A stretch of 64,000 nt of DNA from Octopus bimaculoides (lineage: Eukaryota), in the NCBI RefSeq assembly GCF_001194135.2, contig NC_068990.1, forward strand, positions 61,443,252-61,507,251. The letters run 5' to 3'. Positions 1 through 63,699 of this stretch are shown one piece after another. Position numbers and translations under genes: made by a program. A model generated the notes under the pieces. It did no database searches. It was not told the DNA's origin and worked only from the letters and a program-made list of their open reading frames with translations. Each line of letters opens with the position of its first letter. Within the stretch, counting starts at the first letter, position 1.

Positions 1-1031
1 GTTCACTGATGAAAAGAAATTTGACATCAAATAGACAGCTTGAATGAAAGAACTTGCAGAAGATGGCTTGCAAAATTCAGAAGTAGAGATTTCAGCCTTG
101 AAGATGAAGATTAAACAGGACGTCCAGTTGAGTCTGATGATAAGCTCCTTGAGGCATTACTTGAAGAAAATCCTGCATTATCAGTTGAAGAATTGGCAAT
201 AAAGCTTAGTTCAAACCATACAACTGTTCTTCATCATCTTCAACAACTTGGAAAGGTTCCTAAACTTGGAAAATGGGTGCCTCATTAATTGTCCAAAAGG
301 AACCGCAAATCCCGAGTTGGCATCTGCTCTTCTCTCTATTCTCGCAAACTTATTTCACCCTTTTGGATAGACTTGTGACTGGTGACAAAAAATGGATCTT
401 CTATTGAAATGTTAAACATCGTAAACAGTGGCTTGGTAAAAAGAAAAAAGTTCAACCACAACCGAAAAGGGAACTTCATGGAAAAAAGGTTCTTCTCTCT
501 ATCTGGTGGGATTGCAAAGGAGTAATTTACTTTGAATTGTTACCACCTAATGCAACAATCAATGCTCAAGTCTACTGTCAGCACTCAGAGCATTTGAACC
601 AAGCTTTGAAGAAAAAAAAACCCGCTTTAGTGAATCGAAAAAGAGTGATGTTTCATCAGGACAATGCGCAACCCCACACTGCAAAGATCACATCACAAAA
701 GATCGAAGAGCTTGGTTGGGAAAAATTTCCTCATCCACCTTAATCTCCTGACCTTGCTCCTTCAGACTACCATTTGTTTCATAGTTTAGAGAATCATTTG
801 GGGAACATAACTTTTGCAAGCCAGGTGGAGGTCGAAACTGACATTTCAGAGTTCTTCCCCTTGAGACCAAAAAAGTTTTACATTGATGGGATTAAAAAGC
901 TTGTAAACAGATGGAAGGAAGTCATAGATAATCAGGGAAAGTACATTGATGATTAAATTTCAATTAAATATAACATTTGATCACTTGTTTTCTTTATTCA
1001 AAATTCAGACAGAATTTGTGGGATGCCCTGA
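1..1031 (+). mobile_element. mariner (DD34D) transposon, degraded transposase and 3' TIR; 5' end lies outside the window
   Basis: Frameshifted translation shows KWVPH, VTGDKKWIFY, HQDNAQPH...HPP*SPDLAPSDYHLF (34 residues between the 2nd and 3rd D) and a C-terminus ending KYIDD* at 956. The end CAGACAGAATTTGTGGGATGCCCTGA is followed by TA at 1032-1033. Confidence 0.93.
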
Positions 1032-2787: not shown

Positions 2788-3201
2788 TTTTATCTTTCGC
2801 TTGTTTTAGTCATTAGACTGTGACCATGCTGGAACACTACCTTAAAGAATGTTTTTAGTCCAACAAATTGACCGCAACACTTATTATCTTTGAAGTATTT
2901 ATTCTATCAGTCTCTTTTGCTGAATCCTTAAGTCATGGGGATGTAAACACATCAACACCAGCTGTCAAGCAGTGGTGGTGGTGGGGGAACAAGCACAGAC
3001 ACAATCACACACACACACACACACACACATACACATGATGAACTTCTTTCAGTTTCCGTCTACCAAATCCATTTACAAGGCTTTGGTTTGCCCAAGGTTA
3101 TAGTAGAAGACACCTGCCCAAGGTGTCACGCAGTGGGACTGAACCCAGAACCATATCTTTGGAAAGCAAACTTCTTTCCACACAACCACTCTTGTGCCTA
3201 T
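2788..3201 (-). mobile_element. SINE family A (tRNA head + body + internal CA/TA microsatellite + tail)
   Basis: Reverse complement matches the copy at 10222-10645 (B-box-like GGTTCAGTCCC, CTTGGGCA, GTAGACGGAAACTGAAAGAAG). Confidence 0.88.
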
Positions 3202-6789: not shown

Positions 6790-7092
<303 letters not shown>

Positions 7093-7750
7093 GACTTTCT
7101 GGAAGAACACAATCTGCAACGTGTTTCAGCAGACAATCCAGAAGTAGCCTGCATAAAACCTTTCCTAAAACAGAAAGCAATGATATTCCCCTATAGTTAC
7201 CACAATCATTCCTGTTGCCCTTTCCCTTATATAAGACCACCATTACTGTATCTCTCTAGTCCTTGGGTACAGATTCACTATCCCATATCCTGCCAAACAA
7301 GGAGTGAAGTTGCTGCAGAAGTTTCTCACCACCATGCTGCAACAACTTTGCATGAATGCCATCCATACCCGGAGACCTTCCATTATTCAACCTTGAGACA
7401 GCTACTGCAACTTCTTCCAGCATTGGTGGTTTTGCGAGAGCCGCCTTCACGGGTAACTCAGGAATGAGATTGAGAATATCCTCACTAACTACTGACTGCT
7501 GATTCAAAAGTCCATCAAAATGTTCTCGCCACCTTCACAGAATTCCTTGTGAATCATGAAGAAGTTCTTTATCATCCTTGCTTCGAAGTGGTGTCATCAG
7601 AGAAGAAGTCGGGCCATAAACTTCTCGCAAGAGACCATATAACAGCTTTGTGTTATTGGAATCTGACGCTGCCTTATCTCATCAGGCTTCTTACTCCACC
7701 ACGTATCCCTCATCTGAGAGAGCCTCCACCTCACACGTGATTTTACATCC
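7093..7750 (-). mobile_element. RTE-clade (BovB-like) LINE ORF2 fragment
   Basis: Translations RWREHFDGLLN, NGRSPGMDGIHAKLLQHGG and VVLYKGKGNRNDCGNYRGISLLSVLGKV (pre-RT to RT domain 1). Confidence 0.92.
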
Positions 7751-10221: not shown

Positions 10222-10645
10222 GAGTGGCTGTGTGGTAAGAAGCTTGCTTACCAACCACATGGTTCCGGGTTCAGTCCCACTGCGTGGCACCTTGGGCAAG
10301 TGTCTTCTGCTATAGCCTTGGGCCAACCAAAGCCTTGTGAGTGGATTTGGTAGACAGAAACTGAAAGAAGCCCATCGTATATATGTATATATATATGTGT
10401 GTGTGTGTGTGTATGTTTGTGCATGTATGTTTGTGTGTGTGTGTTTGTTCCCCCCCCCCCAACATCGCTTAACAACCGATGCTGGTGTGTTTACATCCCC
10501 GTAACTTAGTGGTTCGGCAAAAGAGACCAATAGAATAAGTACTAGGCTTACAAAGAATAAGTCCTGGGGTCGATTTGCTCGACTAACGGCGGTGCTCCAG
10601 CATGGCCACAGTCAAATGACTGAAACAAGTAAAAGAGTAAAAGAG
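10222..10645 (+). mobile_element. SINE family A, near full length
   Basis: tRNA-like head GAGTGGCTGTGTGGTAAG...GGTTCAGTCCC, internal (TA/TG)n, tail GACTGAAACAAGTAAAAGAGTAAAAGAG. Further copies or fragments at ~11860-12250, 15645-15850, 16135-16520, 18960-19350, 21700-21850, 22390-22680, 25085-25435, 27063-27215, 38020-38200, 38530-38680, 43795-43890, 44590-44810, 60360-60470 and 60910-61080. Confidence 0.92.
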
Positions 10646-19192: not shown

Positions 19193-19621
19193 ACAAGCCT
19201 CTTCCAGTTTCTGTCTACCAAATCCACTCATGAGGCTTTGGTCAGCCTGAGGCTACGGTAAAAGACACTTGCCCAAGGTGCCAGGCAATGGGGTTAAACC
19301 CAAAACTATGTGGTTAGGAAGCAAGCTTCTTACCACACAGCCATGCCTACACCTATATGTATATGTATTCATATATACATATATGTACGTAAGATTTTTC
19401 TTTGTGTTTGATTTAAATTATTCTAGAGAGTGTGTAAGCTGGTTGCTAACAAAGCAACAAAACTTTTTGAGTTAAGAGAGTTCCTGGTAAATATGTGGTT
19501 GAGATGGTATGTTGATTGGACTGTCAATGTATATACCCAAGTGTGTGCATCTATTCAAATAAGAATCTCACATGGAGAATGTTTGGAATTTTCTGTGTAT
19601 ATGTATGTATGTATGTATATA

Positions 19622-20018
19622 CTCTTTTACTCTTTTACTTGTTTCAGTCATTTGACTGCGGCCATGCTGGAGCACCACCTTTAGTCGAGCAAATCGACTC
19701 CGGGACTTATTCTTTGTAAGCCTAGTACTTATTCTATCGGTCTCTTTTGCCGAACCACTAAGTTACGGGGACATAAACACACCAGCATCGGTTGTCAAGC
19801 GATGTTGGGGGACAAACACAGACACACAAACATATACATACATACATATATACATATATACGATGGGCTTCTTTCAGTTTCCGTCTACCAAATCCACTCA
19901 CAAGGCTTTGGTTGGCCCGAGGCTATAGTAGAAGACATTTTGCCCAAGATGCCACGCAGTGGGACTGAACCCGGAACCATGTGGTTGGTAAGCAAGCTAC
20001 TTACCACACAGCCACTCC
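19622..20018 (-). mobile_element. SINE family A, near full length
   Basis: Near-identical to the reverse complement of 10222-10645. Confidence 0.93.
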
Positions 20019-25089: not shown

Positions 25090-26284
25090 GATGGGCTTCT
25101 TTTAGTTTCTGTCTACCAAATCCACTCTCAAGGCTTTGGTCTGCCCAAGGTTATAGTAAAAGAGACTTGCCCAAGGTGCCACGCTGTGGGACTGAACCTA
25201 GACTCACGTGCTTGGGAAGCAAGCTTCTTAACACACGCACCCACACATACACATGCACACATATATACACATGGACAATGGACTTCCATGTAGTTTCAAT
25301 GTACTAAGTTCACTTGCAAGGCATTGATCAGCTCAGGGCTATAGTAAAAAAATATGCTTGTCCTGGGTGTTGCACAGTGAGACTGAACCTGGAACCGTGT
25401 GGTTGTAAAATGAGCTTCTTAACCACACAGCTATGTCTGCAAATAGTGGAGTGAATTTAGAGGACTATAATCTCTTGTATAAATTTATCGGGCAGCCTTA
25501 TGGGTCCATGCAAGAAACTGATACTGCCATGTAGAATGCTTAACCCATTACCTACCAGTGATCTCATATGAGATCACTTAAAAATTACAAATTTCGTAAT
25601 TTTCTGTCAATATTTACACATATCTAACCTTTTTTGCTATATCTACTAGGTATATTTCTCTGATATTCAAATGAGGTTTGCTAATGTTTCACCCAATATC
25701 TCGCATATTTCTATTTAAAATGTTATTTTGAAATGTTATTTTGATCATTCCAGCGTGTTTCTAAGGCTGTTTTATGCTAGAAATCAAAGTTTCATAAAAA
25801 AAATTCCAGTTAATAAAATTATGGAAGGTATTGGGTTAAGGTTCTTTTGATGAGCTTGTGTATTGGTCACTCTCTTCTTTGCCACTCCAGATCATATCCC
25901 TACCCACAGCTATCAGGGCACAGATTGCTTCCCGCAAGTGCAAAGTCTGCGAGTCAGAGTGGCTGTTCCAGTGCATTTCCCTTACTGTCCTCTGGGGCAA
26001 TGCCTTTTCCATTTTGTCTGCTGGTGCCATGACAAATGTTTCTATTTTGTGAGAGGCACGACTCTCCATTAACCATTTACCTATAAGTCTGAATAATAAA
26101 TCATAAGAACTGGCGATGTAGGTTGGGTGGGGAGTGCTAAGCAGTAATAAGTAAAATTGTAATGTTATTATCAGTCTGAATATGTTTGACGCACGTTCGA
26201 ACTGGGGAACAAGCCACTCACTGTGTTTTGTCACGGAGAATGTATCTTTCTTGTAGACAAATGGTGTATATACACGTAGATCAG

Positions 26285-26376
26285 CTCGCAGTACCATCTA
26301 CCTAGACTGAGATGTTAACATTTCGGAGCAGTTGTCTCCTCATCAGTCACAGACACTAAGCAGATGGCACTGCAAG
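26285..26376 (-). ncRNA. extended type I hammerhead ribozyme with an intact catalytic core
   Basis: Minus strand: GCAGUGCCAUCUGCUUAG ugucug UGA CUGAUGA GGAG acaacug CUCC GAA AUG uuaa CAU C^ UCA gu CUAGGUAGAUGGUACUGC. All core nucleotides are present. Stem II is 4 bp, stem III 3-4 bp, stem I is 3 bp + internal loop + 18-21 bp. The AUC cleavage site lies between 26311 and 26310. Confidence 0.9.
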
Positions 26377-26612
26377 TAGAATTAAGAGATTACCTCTCTT
26401 ATGCTTTTCCAGTCACCGTACGATGACTGGCAGTGCTATATGGTGGCTCACTGTCAGTAAATTACGGAGGGTGAGAGCTAAGCAGTAATAAGTGAAATTA
26501 CATTGTTATCATCAATTCAAATATGCCTGATGCATGTTCGAACTGGAGAACAAGCTACTCACATTTTGTCATGGAGAAAAGCATAAGAGAGGTAAGCTCT
26601 TAATTCAGCTCA

Positions 26613-26698
26613 CAGTGCCATCTGCTTAGTGTCTGTGACCAATAAGGAGACAATTACTCTGAAATGTTAACATCTCACAGTTTAGGTAGATGGTGCTG
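26613..26698 (+). pseudogene. inactivated inverted copy of the same hammerhead
   Basis: Same stems, but the core CTGATGA reads CCAATAA (26639-26645) and stem II is GGAG/CTCT. Confidence 0.85.
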
Positions 26699-26934
26699 CA
26701 AGCTGATCTAGGTGCATGCATGCCATTCGTCAACAAGTGAGGTATATTCTCTGTGACAAAATTCAGCGAGCAGCTTGTTCTCTAGTCAAACCATTCATCA
26801 AGCATGCTTGGACTGATAATAACATTGCATAAGAACTGGATACCACAAAATAACAAACAGGAAGCCATCAACTCCGTGTTTGTTAGAGCTTGTGTTTGGT
26901 GCAATCTTTATATTTCTATAGAACCTATTGTATG

Positions 26935-26973
<39 letters not shown>

Positions 26974-27022
26974 TCACATGCACACACATTCACACACACA
27001 CATATACACAAATATATATTAT

Positions 27023-27063
<41 letters not shown>

Positions 27064-28224
27064 AAAGGGCTTCTTTCAGTTTCTGTCTACCAAATCCAAT
27101 TACAGCACTTTGGTTTGCTCAGAGATATAGCAGAAGACACTTGCCCAAGGTACCATGCAGTAGAACTGAACCCAAAGTCATTTGGTTGGCCAGGAAACTT
27201 CTTAACACACAGCCATACCATACCTTATTTCATGAGAGTGATTGAACTTTCATCTTCTATATCACTTCTTCAACACAGAAAGAACCTATAACTTATTCAT
27301 GAGTATAACATGTGGCATTAGACTGAGATTTATATTTTCACCTTGACTGCAATAACCAAATGTTATTCCTGGAGACATAAGTTGATATTTTCTTCTTCGC
27401 CTTCAAACACCACTTTCATTCATTCATTCATTTTTTTTTTACTGTTTTACTGCCATTTTTTAATATTCTATGATAAATATTTTTTTAGATATTTTGTTAT
27501 TTGGTATTTTCTGTTTCATAAACGTACTATCTATGTATACCATATTTCCTTGACATACAAGCCAATGTAGTATATAGTGTAGACATTCAAATATTGCTGC
27601 AATCTTTCCAAATCGTGTTACATTTCACATGGGATTTTCAGTCCTCCAAACTTGTCTTGGTAAATACGACAACCAAGAATTTTGACTGTAAATTTTGGTC
27701 TGAAAAATTTGAATTGCATTTCAGAAAATACAGTATCATCATCATCGTCGTCATCGTCATCGTCATCATCATCATCATCACCATTTAACATTCATTTTCC
27801 ATGTTGGCATGGGTTGGATGGCTTGACAGGAACTGGCAAGGCCAGGGACCACACCGGGTGCCATAGTCTGCTTTGGCTGGGTTTCTATGGCTGGAAGCCT
27901 GCCCTTCCTAACACCAGTTGTTGTAACAATTTTATTTCATATAGGTTATGAGGCATGTGAAATTTAAACTTCATCATCTTATTATATAACAAGCAAATCA
28001 TGAACTTTTAGAAGAAATAACAAACACAGACAGACTTCACACCATCACCACCACCACCACCACCACCATCATGTCACATCTATTTTTCCAATGAATGATA
28101 CACAGTCAAGGATGTTCTTTATTCCTGTCAAAGAAAACTGCTTCAGTGCCTCCATAATGGTTATGACAAATGTATGATACACACATAAGCAAAGAATGGC
28201 AATTTTTCTCTGTTGAGTACATAC

Positions 28225-29649: not shown

Positions 29650-31809
29650 TCGTCGTCGTCGTTGTCGTTTAACGTCCGCTTTCCATGTTAGCATGGGTTG
29701 GACGATTTGACTGAGGACTGGTGAAACTAGATGGTTACACCAGTCTCCAATCTGATTTGGCATAGTTTCTACAGCTGGATGCCCTTCCTAACGCCAACCA
29801 CTCAGAGAGTGTAGTGGGTGCTTTTACGTNNNNNNNNNNNNNNNNNNNNNNNNNNNNNNNNNNNNNNNNNNNNNNNNNNNNNNNNNNNNNNNNNNNNNNN
29901 NNNNNNNNNNNNNNNNNNNNNNNNNNNNNNNNNNNNNNNNNNNNNNNNNNNNNNNNNNNNNNNNNNNNNNNNNNNNNNNNNNNNNNNNNNNNNNNNNNNN
30001 NNNNNNNNNNNNNNNNNNNNNNNNNNNNNNNNNNNNNNNNNNNNNNNNNNNNNNNNNNNNNNNNNNNNNNNNNNNNNNNNNNNNNNNNNNNNNNNNNNNN
30101 NNNNNNNNNNNNNNNNNNNNNNNNNNNNNNNNNNNNNNNNNNNNNNNNNNNNNNNNNNNNNNNNNNNNNNNNNNNNNNNNNNNNNNNNNNNNNNNNNNNN
30201 NNNNNNNNNNNNNNNNNNNNNNNNNNNNNNNNNNCTGGCAACGGTCCCGCTCGAAAGATTTCATGTGTTGCCCGCACATGGGCCAGTCCAGGAGCACTGG
30301 CAACGATCTCGCTCGAAAATCCTACGACGGCCCCGCACAATAGCCAGTTCAGGGGCACGGCAACGATCTATTTCTATTACACTTGCCTCAACAGGTCTTC
30401 GCAAGTGGGGTTTAGTGTCCAATTTTAATTTAACTCGATTTCGATTTCACTTGCCTCAACAGGCCTACGCAGTGGAGTTTAGTGTCCAACTTAACTTGAT
30501 TTCGATTTCACTTGTCTCAACAGGTCTTCACAAGTTGAATTTAGTGTCCAATGAAGGAAGGAAGGTATGCATAACTGGACTGGCTGGGTCTTAGCTTGGC
30601 TTGCCGGGTCTTCTCGCGCACAGTATATTTCCAAAGGTCTCGGTCAGAAGTCATCGCCTCGGTGAGGCCCAATGTTCGAAGGTCGTGCCTTACCACCTCA
30701 TCCCAGGTCTTCCTGGGCCTACCTCTTCCACAGGTTCCCTCAACTGCTAAGGTGTGGCACTTTTTCACACAGCTATCATCATCCATTTTCGCTACATGAC
30801 CATACCAGCGCAGTTGTCTCTCTTGCACTCTACAACTGATGCTTCGTAAGTTCAACTTTTCTCTCAAGGTACTGATACTCTGTCTAGTATGCACACTGAC
30901 ATTACACATCCATCGGAGCATTCCTTGCGAGCCTATGCATGTCCTCAGCAGTCACGGCCCATGTTTCACTGCCATGAAGCATGGCTGTTCGTACACATGC
31001 GTCATACAATCTGCCTTTTACTCTGAGAGAGAGACCCTTTGTCGCCAGCAGAGGTAAGAGCTCTCTGAACTTTGCCCAGGCTATTCTAATTCTAGCAGCT
31101 ACGCTTTCAGCGCACCCACNNNNNNNNNNNNNNNNNNNNNNNNNNNNNNNNNNNNNNNNNNNNNNNNNNNNNNNNNNNNNNNNNNNNNNNNNNNNNNNNN
31201 NNNNNNNNNNNNNNNNNNNNNNNNNNNNNNNNNNNNNNNNNNNNNNNNNNNNNNNNNNNNNNNNNNNNNNNNNNNNNNNNNNNNNNNNNNNNNNNNNNNN
31301 NNNNNNNNNNNNNNNNNNNNNNNNNNNNNNNNNNNNNNNNNNNNNNNNNNNNNNNNNNNNNNNNNNNNNNNNNNNNNNNNNNNNNNNNNNNNNNNNNNNN
31401 NNNNNNNNNNNNNNNNNNNNNNNNNNNNNNNNNNNNNNNNNNNNNNNNNNNNNNNNNNNNNNNNNNNNNNNNNNNNNNNNNNNNNNNNNNNNNNNNNNNN
31501 NNNNNNNNNNNATAAATAGGAGGGGGCTGAGGACAGAACCTTGGTGGACCCCTACCTCCACCCGGAATTCTTCACTGTACTCTCTGCCAATCCTCACCTT
31601 ACTGACAGAGTTTCTGTACATGGCTCGCACAGCTCTCACTAACCATTCTTCTATCCCTAGTTTCCTCATTGACCACCAGATGAGAGATCAGAGGACCCTG
31701 TCAAAGGCTTTCTCCATATCAACGAAAGCCAGGAACAGAGGTTTATCCTTGGCTAGGTATTTCTCCTGAAGCTGTCTTACCAGAAATATAGCATCAGTGG
31801 TGCTTTTCC

Positions 31810-61593: not shown

Positions 61594-61989
61594 CTCTTTT
61601 ACTTGTTTCAGTCATTTGACTGTGGCCATGCTGGAGCACCACCTTTAGTTGAGCAAATCGACTCCAGGACTTATTTATTGTAAGCCTAGTACTTATTCTA
61701 TCGGTCTCTTTTGCCAAACCGCTAAGTTACGGGGGACGTAAACACACCAGCATCAGTGGTCAAGCGATGTTGAGGGGACAAACACAGACACACAAACATA
61801 TACACACACATACATATATATATACATATATATGACGGGCTTCTTTCAGTTTCTGTCTACCAAATCCACTCACAAGGCTTTGGTCGGCCCGAGGCTATAG
61901 CAGAAGACACTTGCCCAAGGTGCCGCGCATTGGGACTGAACCCGGAACCATGTGGCTGGTAAGCAAGCTACTTACCACACAGCCACTCC
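61594..61989 (-). mobile_element. SINE family A, near full length
   Basis: Near-identical to 19622-20018. Confidence 0.93.
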
Positions 61990-63699
61990 TACGCTTATAC
62001 CTAAGTACGATGTATAAATATGTATATGCTTGTCTGTATGTGATTGTACTTGTATTTGTGTTCGATACAACATTTAAAAGCAGCATTATGTCAAAAAAGT
62101 CTCTTTATTAGCTACTCAATACTTATAGCATAATGGGCTAAACACCAGGCTATAATAAATGCTTGGGGCTGGGGTTTATATGGCTTACTAGAAACCTTAT
62201 ACAATGGTGCCCCAGCATGGCTGCAATCCAATGACTGAAATTGCTAAATTAATGAAAGAATACTTGAATCTAGTATTTGGGCTCACTTAATCCAAAACTG
62301 TCTTTCATATCTGCAATTTCATGTAACATGTCTTCATACAGGAATACCAAACATGTGTACAAACAATGAATAATGTCTAAAATTGATAGAGACATTGAAG
62401 TTTTATGTACCCTGACTTATGTACACTACCCACACACACATACACACACATGCACATGAACACAAATACACACACACTTACACACATGCATGCTTGTATG
62501 TATACGTTTGTTATACAAAGACAGATGCCTATTGCACATGTTGGTATGAGCATACATGTCCACAAAAGCAAAAAAAACACCCAGTATTCATTCATACAGG
62601 AAAGTTTAACCCTTCAGTTGTATGATTTCTGTCTCTCTCACATGCATGCATACACACACACACACATACATACATACATACCCACACACATACATATATA
62701 TATAGAAACATATACATATGCATAAACCTATGTGTGCATACATATATAAATATATATCTATGTATGTATGCATATATACACATATATATATACATATACA
62801 CATATATATGCACTTACATACATTCACACACACTGTTTGCTTACTTATGTAATGAAACGCTTGCTCGTACACACATACACACATCCACTCACACGCATGA
62901 AAATGTTTAGAAACATTAACAATTCATGTTTTTTTTACACAAGTCCACGTACACACACACATCCAGAAACAGACCAGCATTTATACACACACATTACTTA
63001 TACTCTCTCTCTCTTTTTCACAGACTCTTTGTCTTTCACTCAATGTTTCTTCCTCTCTCTCTCTCTCTTTCCCTTTCTGTCTATAAACAACACGACATTG
63101 ATCCAGCCTACCCACAGGGTCTCCACGTCACAGTTCTATCTCTCTCTTAATATTTCTGTGCGTTTCATAAAGCACATTGATATAATCAATATTTGAAATC
63201 CTACATAAGCAGAAAAGTCATGAACCATATATAACGTTATCAATAAATGTTAACAGTACAACTAACAGAACAATGGTTCCATGCAATCCATTGTATATCT
63301 GCAAGACAGTAGGACCAACTAACTGAGTTCTTCAGTACCAACACACCACTGTTCATTTATGTCTTTCATGCTAGACATGAATACAATTCAACTGACACTT
63401 TAGGATTCGTCGTCGTTGTTGTTGTTGTTGTTTCTGCTGTTGTTTAGATTTAGATCAGTTCTGACTTATGAAGATCAAAAGGCTTTTTCAGAATGTGGCC
63501 GACTGTCTCACTGGTTCTGTTTTTCAGAAAAATGGAAAGTCACATTGCATTATGCAATATAACCTTCCATATTTTAAAAGGCAGTTTCGTTTGATCTGAA
63601 TGAGATTTGGCTGTTATTTCTAACATGTAGTGTGTCCATGCAGAGAATCCAATCATTAATGCTTGTTTTTGATGATGTTTAGCCACAGATTAGACTTGA

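What the first reader, a model, noticed from the sequence alone, without database searches (positions are those of the whole stretch)
26136..26788. Retrozyme / Penelope-pLTR-like non-autonomous retroelement: ~341-nt structured unit in direct-plus-inverted arrangement
Seen: segment A recurs at a 341-nt period (26136 and 26477). At 26578 the sequence flips into an inverted copy of 26198-26409, at a GGA(G)AAAA microhomology. Besides the hammerhead, the unit has three further hairpins: TAAGAGA/TCTCTTA (~26383-26401), CCAGTCA/TGACTGG (26409-26430) and CAGTG/CACTG (26431-26453). Established: partial tandem pLTRs with an inverted 5' extension typify Penelope-like insertions, and animal retrozymes are a few hundred nt, highly structured and yield circular RNAs. 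Inference: this is a genomic copy of a ~340-nt ribozyme-processed, possibly circular, RNA replicon mobilised by a Penelope RT. It is the best candidate here for an undescribed system.
Basis: partly seen in the sequence, partly recalled or inferred. Interest (0 to 1): 0.82.

Follow-up and report, generated by a model that had tools for sequence, protein, structure and literature searches.

The report
Decayed hammerhead-ribozyme retroelement insertion in octopus
This is an old, mutated 714-bp insertion of a small non-coding mobile element that carries a self-cleaving hammerhead ribozyme. It is an animal "retrozyme" laid down in the pattern typical of Penelope-like retrotransposons, a kind already described in other animals, though I found no report of it in octopus.

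Summary
A 341-nt unit is present as 1.3 head-to-tail copies (26129-26578), followed by a 254-nt inverted copy (26576-26829). The whole 714-bp block (26114-26827) is flanked by a perfect 12-bp target-site duplication, CATAAGAACTGG. The element's sense strand is the minus strand. There the unit carries the only hammerhead-descriptor match in the 64-kb window (expected 0.007), and it folds far better than shuffles (z -5.6, against -1.5 for the other strand). The ribozyme has the canonical animal type I architecture: helix I 6 bp, helix II 4 bp, short palindromic helix III.

Partial tandem plus an inverted 5' copy plus a long target-site duplication is the published signature of Penelope-like element insertions. 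There is no ORF, so the element is non-autonomous. This matches animal non-LTR retrozymes, described in 2020.

The locus is a fossil. The copies differ by about 20%. One hammerhead has lost 2 nt of helix I and the other has three core mutations. Only one sense-strand ribozyme exists, so this locus cannot release a monomer.

Copy number, circular RNA and the link to an octopus Penelope family could not be tested. It is a new member of a known kind, not an undescribed system.

The parts
26102..26113 (.). Left copy of the 12-bp target-site duplication, CATAAGAACTGG
   Evidence: (D8). It is identical to 26828-26839. 0 of 5000 shuffles gave a shared word of 12 nt or more.
26114..26128 (-). 15-nt 3'-terminal tail that does not match the unit. 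Together with 26129-26157 it makes 44 nt that are present at this end only.
   Evidence: Compare the 30-40 bp one-sided 'tail' reported for PLE insertions (PMC8557442).
26129..26469 (-). Full 341-nt unit (unit 1), sense on the minus strand
   Evidence: Linear fold -103.2 kcal/mol, z -5.6. Circular fold z -4.7. The plus strand gives z -1.5 and -1.2.
26305..26353 (-). Type I hammerhead of unit 1: UCUGUGA-CUGAUGA-GGAG(ACAACUG)CUCC-GAA-AUG(UUAA)CAU-C17 | UCAGUC. The predicted cleavage site lies between 26311 and 26310. The core is intact. The helix I 3' strand lacks 2 nt (CA), leaving 3 bp.
   Evidence: Descriptor scan. Alignment. Weak Rfam hammerhead-clan match of 14.7 bits, E 0.72.
26279..26382 (-). 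Stem of about 17-21 bp that carries the hammerhead at its tip
   Evidence: z -5.4. It was picked up as spurious mir-458-like matches.
26383..26453 (-).
26470..26578 (-). Partial unit 2, the 3'-terminal ~110 nt of the unit, joined head-to-tail to unit 1. It carries no hammerhead.
   Evidence: 82.6% identity to unit 1 over 109 nt.
26573..26580 (.). Direct/inverted junction with GGA/AAA microhomology (GGAGAAAA)
26576..26829 (+). Inverted copy at the element's 5' end. It corresponds to unit positions ~61-314 and its sense is on the plus strand.
   Evidence: I1, I2; 81.3% identity to unit 1 over 252 nt.
26632..26681 (+). Dead hammerhead of the inverted copy. Helix I is intact at 6 bp (CUGUGA/UCACAG). 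The core is CCAAUAA instead of CUGAUGA. C17 is at 26674.
   Evidence: relaxed-core scan, the only hit in the window; expected 0.07. No Rfam match.
26828..26839 (.). Right copy of the 12-bp target-site duplication

Best explanation
The region 26114-26827 is one old insertion of a short (341-nt), non-coding, hammerhead-bearing retroelement in an octopod genome. It is an animal non-LTR retrozyme, that is, a non-autonomous dependant of Penelope-like elements (PLEs).

Inferred life cycle:
- Tandem units are transcribed.
- The canonical type I hammerhead cuts multimeric RNA into unit-length pieces after C17 (AACAUC|UCACAG). Its short palindromic helix III (AUGUUAACAU) favours cleavage when two ribozymes pair as a dimer.
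- In other animals these pieces are circularised by an RtcB-type tRNA ligase.
- A PLE RT/GIY-YIG endonuclease supplied in trans copies the uncut multimer or the circle into the genome.

Inferred events at this site:
- Staggered nicks 12 bp apart gave the target-site duplication.
- The top-strand 3' OH primed a cDNA that ran 1.3 units, so the template was longer than one unit and uncut at the ribozyme site.
- The bottom-strand 3' OH primed a second cDNA in the opposite direction, in a twin-priming-like way, and gave the inverted 254 nt.
- The two cDNAs were joined at GGA/AAA microhomology.

Since insertion, the three pieces have each drifted about 10-13%. Both hammerheads are now defective, and the locus cannot release a monomer.

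Shown: the repeat anatomy, the target-site duplication, the hammerhead motif, the strand-specific fold, the absence of an ORF, and the decay. Inferred: the RNA processing, the circularisation, the PLE enzyme and the priming steps.
For: The perfect 12-bp target-site duplication abuts both ends.

The only hammerhead-descriptor match in 64 kb lies in the unit (expected 0.007). The only relaxed-core match is its inverted copy.

The helix sizes are I 6 bp, II 4 bp, III 2 bp plus A15.1-U16.1 with the 4-nt palindromic loop UUAA. This matches the published 'canonical metazoan type I HHR' of tandem repeats, not the min-HHR of PLE pLTRs (PMC4209133; PMC7229834).

Two copies of the ribozyme domain co-fold into the double hammerhead with a 10-bp intermolecular helix III, at -30.0 kcal/mol against 2 x -11.6.

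The sense strand folds with z -5.6 (linear) and -4.7 (circular), against -1.5 and -1.2 for the antisense strand.

Partial tandem plus an adjacent inverted 5' copy plus a one-sided tail is the published PLE insertion pattern. Non-autonomous PLE derivatives are reported to give head-to-tail multicopies (PMC8557442).

A unit size of 341 nt, 41.5% GC and a target-site duplication above 4 bp all fit retrozyme features. Mussel units are 350-390 bp.

No ORF in the element has a Pfam match, and there is no RT or GIY-YIG in 105 open frames of the window.

The host is an octopod (best named hit Octopus vulgaris). Octopus genomes carry abundant Penelope elements, with an expansion at JC ~0.2 (PMC13282606; PMC8967140).

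Divergence among the three pieces is star-like, with 9, 7 and 11 unique changes in 80 shared columns, as expected for one event followed by neutral decay.
Against: Only one insertion is visible. There is no second copy in the window and none in any reachable collection, so 'family' status is unproven.

Rfam gives no hammerhead match at gathering score. It gives only 14.7 bits against a cut-off of 48.5 in a narrow search.

Neither hammerhead copy is intact on its own. The functional motif is inferred by combining the two copies.

The tandem is only 1.3 units, whereas described retrozymes are usually dimers to large multimers.

The 12/12 identity of the target-site duplication is somewhat unexpected if each piece has decayed about 11% (roughly 0.06 probability). 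The template may therefore already have been heterogeneous and the insertion younger.

No PLE ORF lies nearby, although 5.3 kb of the window is assembly gaps.
Confidence: 0.75

Rival explanations
1. This is not a separate non-autonomous family. It is a one-off rearranged or internally deleted insertion of an autonomous octopus Penelope element. On this reading the 341-nt unit is that element's pLTR/terminal region, and the head-to-tail junction arose by template switching during this single integration.
For: Retrozyme consensus sequences are sister to the pLTRs of PLEs in Xenopus. PLE insertions are heavily 5'-truncated and complex. Octopus has many Penelope copies of similar age. Only one copy is seen here.
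Against: The sequence upstream of unit 1 is the unit's own 3' end, not ORF sequence, so the copied template already had a 341-nt period. The hammerhead has the canonical architecture of tandem-repeat retrozymes rather than the min-HHR described for metazoan PLE pLTRs. The unit has a compact strand-specific fold.
Confidence: 0.17
2. The block is a foldback or long-TIR DNA transposon, or a local inverted duplication, and the hammerhead-like motif is a coincidence.
For: Inverted arms of about 250 bp flank a 166-bp centre, with a flanking direct repeat.
Against: The ends are asymmetric: 44 nt are present at the left end only. A 341-nt direct period is superimposed on the inverted arms. A 12-bp target-site duplication is long for DNA transposons. 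The expected number of chance hammerhead matches is 0.007 per window, and the motif recurs in the inverted copy. The fold is strand-asymmetric.
Confidence: 0.04
3. The block is an assembly artefact of a gap-rich short-read draft, with reads from a tandem array mis-joined into a tandem/inverted chimera.
For: The window has 15 gaps totalling 5324 N. PLE tandem/inverted structures are known to trouble shotgun assemblies.
Against: There is no gap within 1.7 kb of the element. The three pieces differ by about 20%, so they are not collapsed or duplicated reads. The block sits between unique flanks with a perfect target-site duplication.
Confidence: 0.03

Closest known systems
Animal non-LTR retrozymes (Cervera & de la Pena 2020, PMC7229834), for example the 350-390 bp units of Mytilus galloprovincialis and the 220-240 bp units of Acropora
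   Same: The unit is a few hundred nt long, non-coding, low in GC and arranged head-to-tail. It carries a canonical type I hammerhead, has a target-site duplication above 4 bp, and gives a highly self-paired RNA. It co-exists with PLEs in the host lineage.
   Different: Only 1.3 units are present, plus an inverted piece. Both ribozymes are mutated. No evidence of copy number or circular RNA is available. No retrozyme report for cephalopods was found in the held library.
Penelope-like element insertions (pLTR partial tandems with an inverted 5'-truncated copy and a one-sided tail; Evgen'ev & Arkhipova 2005; Craig et al. 2021, PMC8557442)
   Same: It shows a partial tandem, an inverted copy abutting the 5' end, extra sequence at one end only, a hammerhead in the repeated part, and a variable-length target-site duplication.
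   Different: There is no RT/GIY-YIG ORF. The repeat period is 341 nt instead of about 3 kb. The hammerhead is of the canonical type, not the minimal pLTR type.
Classical hammerhead satellites and SINE-like repeats: newt satellite 2 (~330 bp) and Schistosoma Sm-alpha (cited)
   Same: The unit is about 330-340 nt and carries a type I hammerhead with a short palindromic helix III that favours dimeric cleavage.
   Different: There is no detectable sequence relationship. Here the element is a dispersed single insertion rather than a long array.
L1 twin-priming inversions (own knowledge, not tested here)
   Same: An inverted 5' segment is joined to a direct 3' segment at microhomology inside one target-site duplication.
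   Different: A different retroelement class and endonuclease are involved. Here the template was multimeric or circular.

Membership tests
Animal non-LTR retrozyme | Unit of about 150-450 bp repeated head-to-tail | tested here: met
   The period is 341 nt with 1.3 units. This is shorter than the usual dimer-to-multimer arrays.
Animal non-LTR retrozyme | Canonical type I hammerhead in the unit (helix I ~6 bp, helix II ~4 bp, short palindromic helix III) | tested here: met
   measured against the definition. The core is intact in unit 1 and helix I is intact in the inverted copy. Neither copy is intact alone.
Animal non-LTR retrozyme | No ORF, LTR, PBS or PPT; GC below 50%; target-site duplication longer than 4 bp when present | tested here: met
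   ORFs wholly inside the element are at most 39 aa; the one longer frame (153 aa, 25836-26297) runs out into the flank and has no Pfam match. GC is 41.5% and the target-site duplication is 12 bp.
Animal non-LTR retrozyme | Highly self-paired unit RNA | tested here: met
   z -5.6 linear and -4.7 circular on the sense strand, against -1.5 and -1.2 on the antisense strand.
Animal non-LTR retrozyme | Many genomic copies or arrays | not testable with these tools
   There is one insertion in the window. The reachable collections hold no cephalopod DNA and gave nothing.
Animal non-LTR retrozyme | Expressed as unit-length linear and circular RNA | not testable with these tools
   This needs RNA-seq, northern blot or RNase R. 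This locus has only one sense-strand ribozyme, so it cannot itself yield monomers.
Penelope-like element (autonomous) | ORF encoding RT plus GIY-YIG endonuclease | tested here: not met
   None is present in the element or in 105 open frames of at least 75 aa in the window.
Penelope-like insertion architecture | Partial tandem (pLTR) with an inverted 5'-truncated copy adjacent to the 5' end | tested here: met
   against the description.
Penelope-like insertion architecture | 30-40 bp tail at one end only | tested here: inconclusive
   44 nt (26114-26157) are present at the 3' end only. Of these, 29 nt belong to the unit and 15 nt are unmatched.
Hammerhead ribozyme (Rfam clan CL00010) | Covariance-model score at or above gathering | tested here: not met
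   No hit at gathering. Hammerhead_3 scores 14.7 bits against 48.5, E 0.72, in a 91-nt search. Nothing was found for the inverted copy.
Hammerhead ribozyme (Rfam clan CL00010) | Conserved core C3-A9, G12-A14, A15.1-U16.1, H17 | tested here: met
   Unit 1 at 26308-26349 on the minus strand. The inverted copy fails at U4, G5 and G8.
Hammerhead ribozyme (Rfam clan CL00010) | Self-cleavage | not testable with these tools
   This needs in vitro transcription of monomeric and dimeric constructs.

The most novel reading that the evidence does not exclude
Octopods may harbour a lineage-specific, so far unreported family of canonical-hammerhead retrozymes. Its insertions would carry the full Penelope integration signature: partial tandem, inverted 5' copy and a long target-site duplication. 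If that signature holds genome-wide, it would be direct anatomical evidence that PLE machinery, not LINE machinery, mobilises animal retrozymes. The 2020 paper left this point open, and so far it is supported only by co-occurrence and pLTR phylogeny.
Probability: 0.35. Interest if true: 0.45.

Novelty: new member of a known kind. Interest (0 to 1): 0.25.

Why it matters
Taken alone, this is a dead transposon copy with no likely effect on the host. Its modest value is twofold. First, it extends hammerhead retrozymes to cephalopods, for which I found no report in the held library. Second, this single insertion combines a retrozyme-type unit with the integration scars that typify Penelope-like elements. 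A genome-wide survey of such scars could test which enzyme mobilises animal retrozymes.

Tried and rejected
1. Rfam at gathering score on the whole window gave nothing. Rfam at E<=10 on 1.1 kb gave only spurious mir-458, mir-297 and bicoid matches, caused by the long stem and the microsatellite. Narrow searches gave one weak hammerhead-clan hit.

2. I searched for further copies in four ways, all without result:
- BLASTN of the unit and of the whole element against the window found only the three pieces.
- A six-frame pseudo-protein of the element searched against 5.8 billion predicted proteins gave no hit at E<=0.1. This method is insensitive for short non-coding repeats.
- Exact-pattern scans of JGI metagenomes (two patterns) found nothing.
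- An exact-pattern scan of GTDB genomes found nothing. None of these collections is expected to hold cephalopod DNA.

3. I tested for a linked PLE ORF by scanning 105 open frames of at least 75 aa against Pfam. There was no RT/GIY-YIG. Only a mariner transposase fragment and one DUF7041 match appeared. I could not resolve the DUF7041 coordinates.

4. I tested for an ADAR-editing signature in the divergence. A/G and C/T differences are equal (19 and 19), so it was rejected.

5. I tested for tRNA-like or SINE origin of the unit. ARAGORN found nothing. The bacterial promoter/terminator scan is irrelevant for a eukaryote.

6. The 153-aa ORF 25836-26297 that crosses the left junction has no Pfam match and is taken as spurious.

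7. An apparent extension of the flanking repeat beyond 12 bp (D8: 22 nt at 82%) was judged to be AT-rich chance similarity. The right-hand part matches the unit 16/16 and is therefore element-derived.

Full report
**Context.** The window is a gap-rich draft of a eukaryotic genome with 33% GC. It has 15 N runs totalling 5324 N, and it is full of microsatellites and a SINE present in at least 12 copies. A LINE-derived ORF at 30541-30921 (minus strand) has as its best named relative a predicted protein of Octopus vulgaris, at 84% identity. I therefore take the host to be an octopod. This is an inference from one TE protein.

**Observation.**
- A segment recurs at a 341-nt period: 26129-26240 against 26470-26578, about 80-83% identical.
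- From 26576 the sequence is the reverse complement of 26158-26409.
- The switch lies in GGAGAAAA (26573-26580). That stretch overlaps GGAGAA of the direct copy and GGAAAA of the inverted one.
- The three hairpins are at the stated coordinates.
None of 5000 shuffles of the end windows gave a 12-mer.
- The flanks are unique in the window, and no assembly gap lies within 1.7 kb.

This is a discrete insertion with a target-site duplication.

**Orientation and ribozyme.** A structural hammerhead descriptor finds exactly one site in 64 kb on both strands, at 26308-26349 on the minus strand. The expectation is 0.007. Read on the minus strand it is UCUGUGA-CUGAUGA-GGAG(ACAACUG)CUCC-GAA-AUG(UUAA)CAU-C17, with the predicted cut between 26311 and 26310.

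With a relaxed core, the only hit is the homologous site in the inverted copy, 26633-26680 on the plus strand. The two copies are complementary in their damage:
- Unit 1 has an intact core but lacks 2 nt (CA) in the 3' strand of helix I.
- The inverted copy keeps a 6-bp helix I but has CCAAUAA in place of CUGAUGA.

Together they imply an ancestral motif with helix I of 6 bp, helix II of 4 bp, and a short helix III capped by a palindromic 4-nt loop. That is the published definition of the canonical metazoan type I hammerhead, which needs a second copy to cleave well (PMC4209133; PMC7229834). In silico, two copies of the ribozyme domain co-fold into the double hammerhead with a 10-bp intermolecular helix III, at -30.0 kcal/mol against 2 x -11.6.

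Rfam support is weak. There is nothing at gathering score, and only 14.7 bits against a cut-off of 48.5 in a 91-nt search. I report the covariance-model criterion as not met.

**RNA structure.** The ribozyme sits at the tip of a 17-21 bp stem in both copies. The 341-nt unit folds far better than dinucleotide shuffles on the minus strand (z -5.6 linear, -4.7 circular). It does not on the plus strand (z -1.5 and -1.2). This asymmetry agrees with the ribozyme orientation: the sense strand is the minus strand.

**Anatomy in the sense orientation, 5' to 3'.**
1. Target-site duplication (26839-26828).
2. Inverted copy (26829-26576), covering unit positions ~61-314.
3. Partial unit (26578-26470), the last ~110 nt of the unit.
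4. Full unit (26469-26129).
5. A 15-nt unmatched tail (26128-26114).
6. Target-site duplication (26113-26102).

[quoted passage not shown] The same paper reports non-autonomous derivatives that give head-to-tail multicopies.

Because the sequence upstream of unit 1 is the unit's own 3' end, the copied template had a 341-nt period and no ORF. The element has no Pfam-matching ORF. No RT or GIY-YIG frame was found among 105 open frames of the window. The element is therefore non-autonomous.

**Mechanism (inferred).**
- The cDNA runs through the ribozyme cleavage site of unit 1, so the template was an uncut multimer or a circle.
- A top-strand 3' OH at the left target-site duplication primed the 1.3-unit cDNA.
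- A bottom-strand 3' OH at the right target-site duplication primed a second cDNA that became the inverted piece. It started only ~44 nt upstream of the other start on the unit.
- The two cDNAs were joined at microhomology.

The enzyme is presumed to be a PLE RT/endonuclease acting in trans. Octopus genomes carry abundant Penelope elements, with an expansion near JC 0.2 (PMC13282606; PMC8967140). The 2020 retrozyme paper names PLEs as the leading candidate mobiliser, and a 2026 preprint places retrozymes next to PLE pLTRs.

**Age and state.**
- The three pieces differ by JC 0.20-0.27.
- The pattern is star-like, with 9, 7 and 11 unique changes in 80 shared columns.
- The transition:transversion ratio is about 4:1.
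- A/G and C/T differences are equal, so there is no ADAR-type strand bias.

This fits one event followed by neutral decay of about 10-13% per piece. The perfect target-site duplication is then mildly surprising, at roughly 0.06 probability. A heterogeneous template and a younger insertion remain possible.

With one damaged sense ribozyme and one dead antisense one, the locus is a fossil. It cannot produce a unit-length RNA.

**Comparison with what is known.** The unit meets the testable retrozyme features set out in PMC7229834:
- unit size (341 nt; mussel units are 350-390 bp);
- head-to-tail arrangement;
- canonical type I hammerhead;
- no ORF, LTR, PBS or PPT;
- 41.5% GC;
- target-site duplication above 4 bp;
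- a highly paired RNA.

Copy number and circular RNA could not be tested. It is not an autonomous PLE, because the ORF criterion is not met. I found no paper in the held library that links retrozymes or hammerheads with octopus or cephalopods. The cephalopod occurrence may therefore be unreported, but the kind of element is well known.

**Limits.** No cephalopod genome or transcriptome is reachable with these tools. Searches for further copies returned nothing and are uninformative about copy number. The main rival is a one-off rearranged copy of an autonomous Penelope whose pLTR is this unit. It cannot be excluded without the genome, and I give it 0.17. The foldback transposon and assembly artefact readings are unlikely, for the reasons given in the rivals section.

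**Verdict.** This is a decayed insertion of a known kind of element, and interest is low to moderate.

Noticed in passing
window 27067-27215; also 25093-25236, 10225-10373, 61837-61998, 3043-3188, 19859-20014, 41445-41595, 19197-19358: A ~150-nt SINE-like repeat occurs at least 12 times in the window at 75-84% identity. Two copies in direct orientation bracket the region of the finding, about 1 kb away on the left and 0.2 kb on the right (D2, 43).
   Followed up: partly
window 26938-27061: An (AC)n run is followed by a (GT)n run, forming a near-perfect ~120-bp palindrome 100 bp to the right of the insertion. PLEs are reported to prefer microsatellite targets. The insertion itself is not inside the repeat.
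   Followed up: no
window 408-740 (+): A mariner-type transposase fragment: Pfam Transposase_1, E 5e-28.
   Followed up: no
window 30541-31669 (-) and 6881-7243 (-): LINE reverse-transcriptase fragments. The first is interrupted by an assembly gap at 31120-31511. Its C-terminal part is 84% identical to a predicted Octopus vulgaris protein.
   Followed up: partly
window, coordinates not resolved: One of 105 open frames of at least 75 aa matches Pfam DUF7041 (E 6e-12). Ten candidate frames re-scanned individually were negative.
   Followed up: partly
window 26195-26202 and 26536-26543: The palindrome GTTCGAAC, which resembles a Pol III B box or T-loop, is conserved in unit 1 and unit 2 but lost in the inverted copy (AGTCAAAC). 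ARAGORN finds no tRNA-like structure.
   Followed up: partly
window 25836-26297 (-): A 153-aa ORF crosses the left junction of the insertion. It has no Pfam match and is probably spurious. The left flank 25860-26040 is richer in GC than its surroundings and is unique in the window.
   Followed up: partly
window 26279-26382 (-) and 26603-26708 (+): Sub-threshold Rfam mir-458 matches (20-24 bits against a cut-off of 59) are caused by the long stem that carries the hammerhead. They are not evidence of a miRNA.
   Followed up: yes
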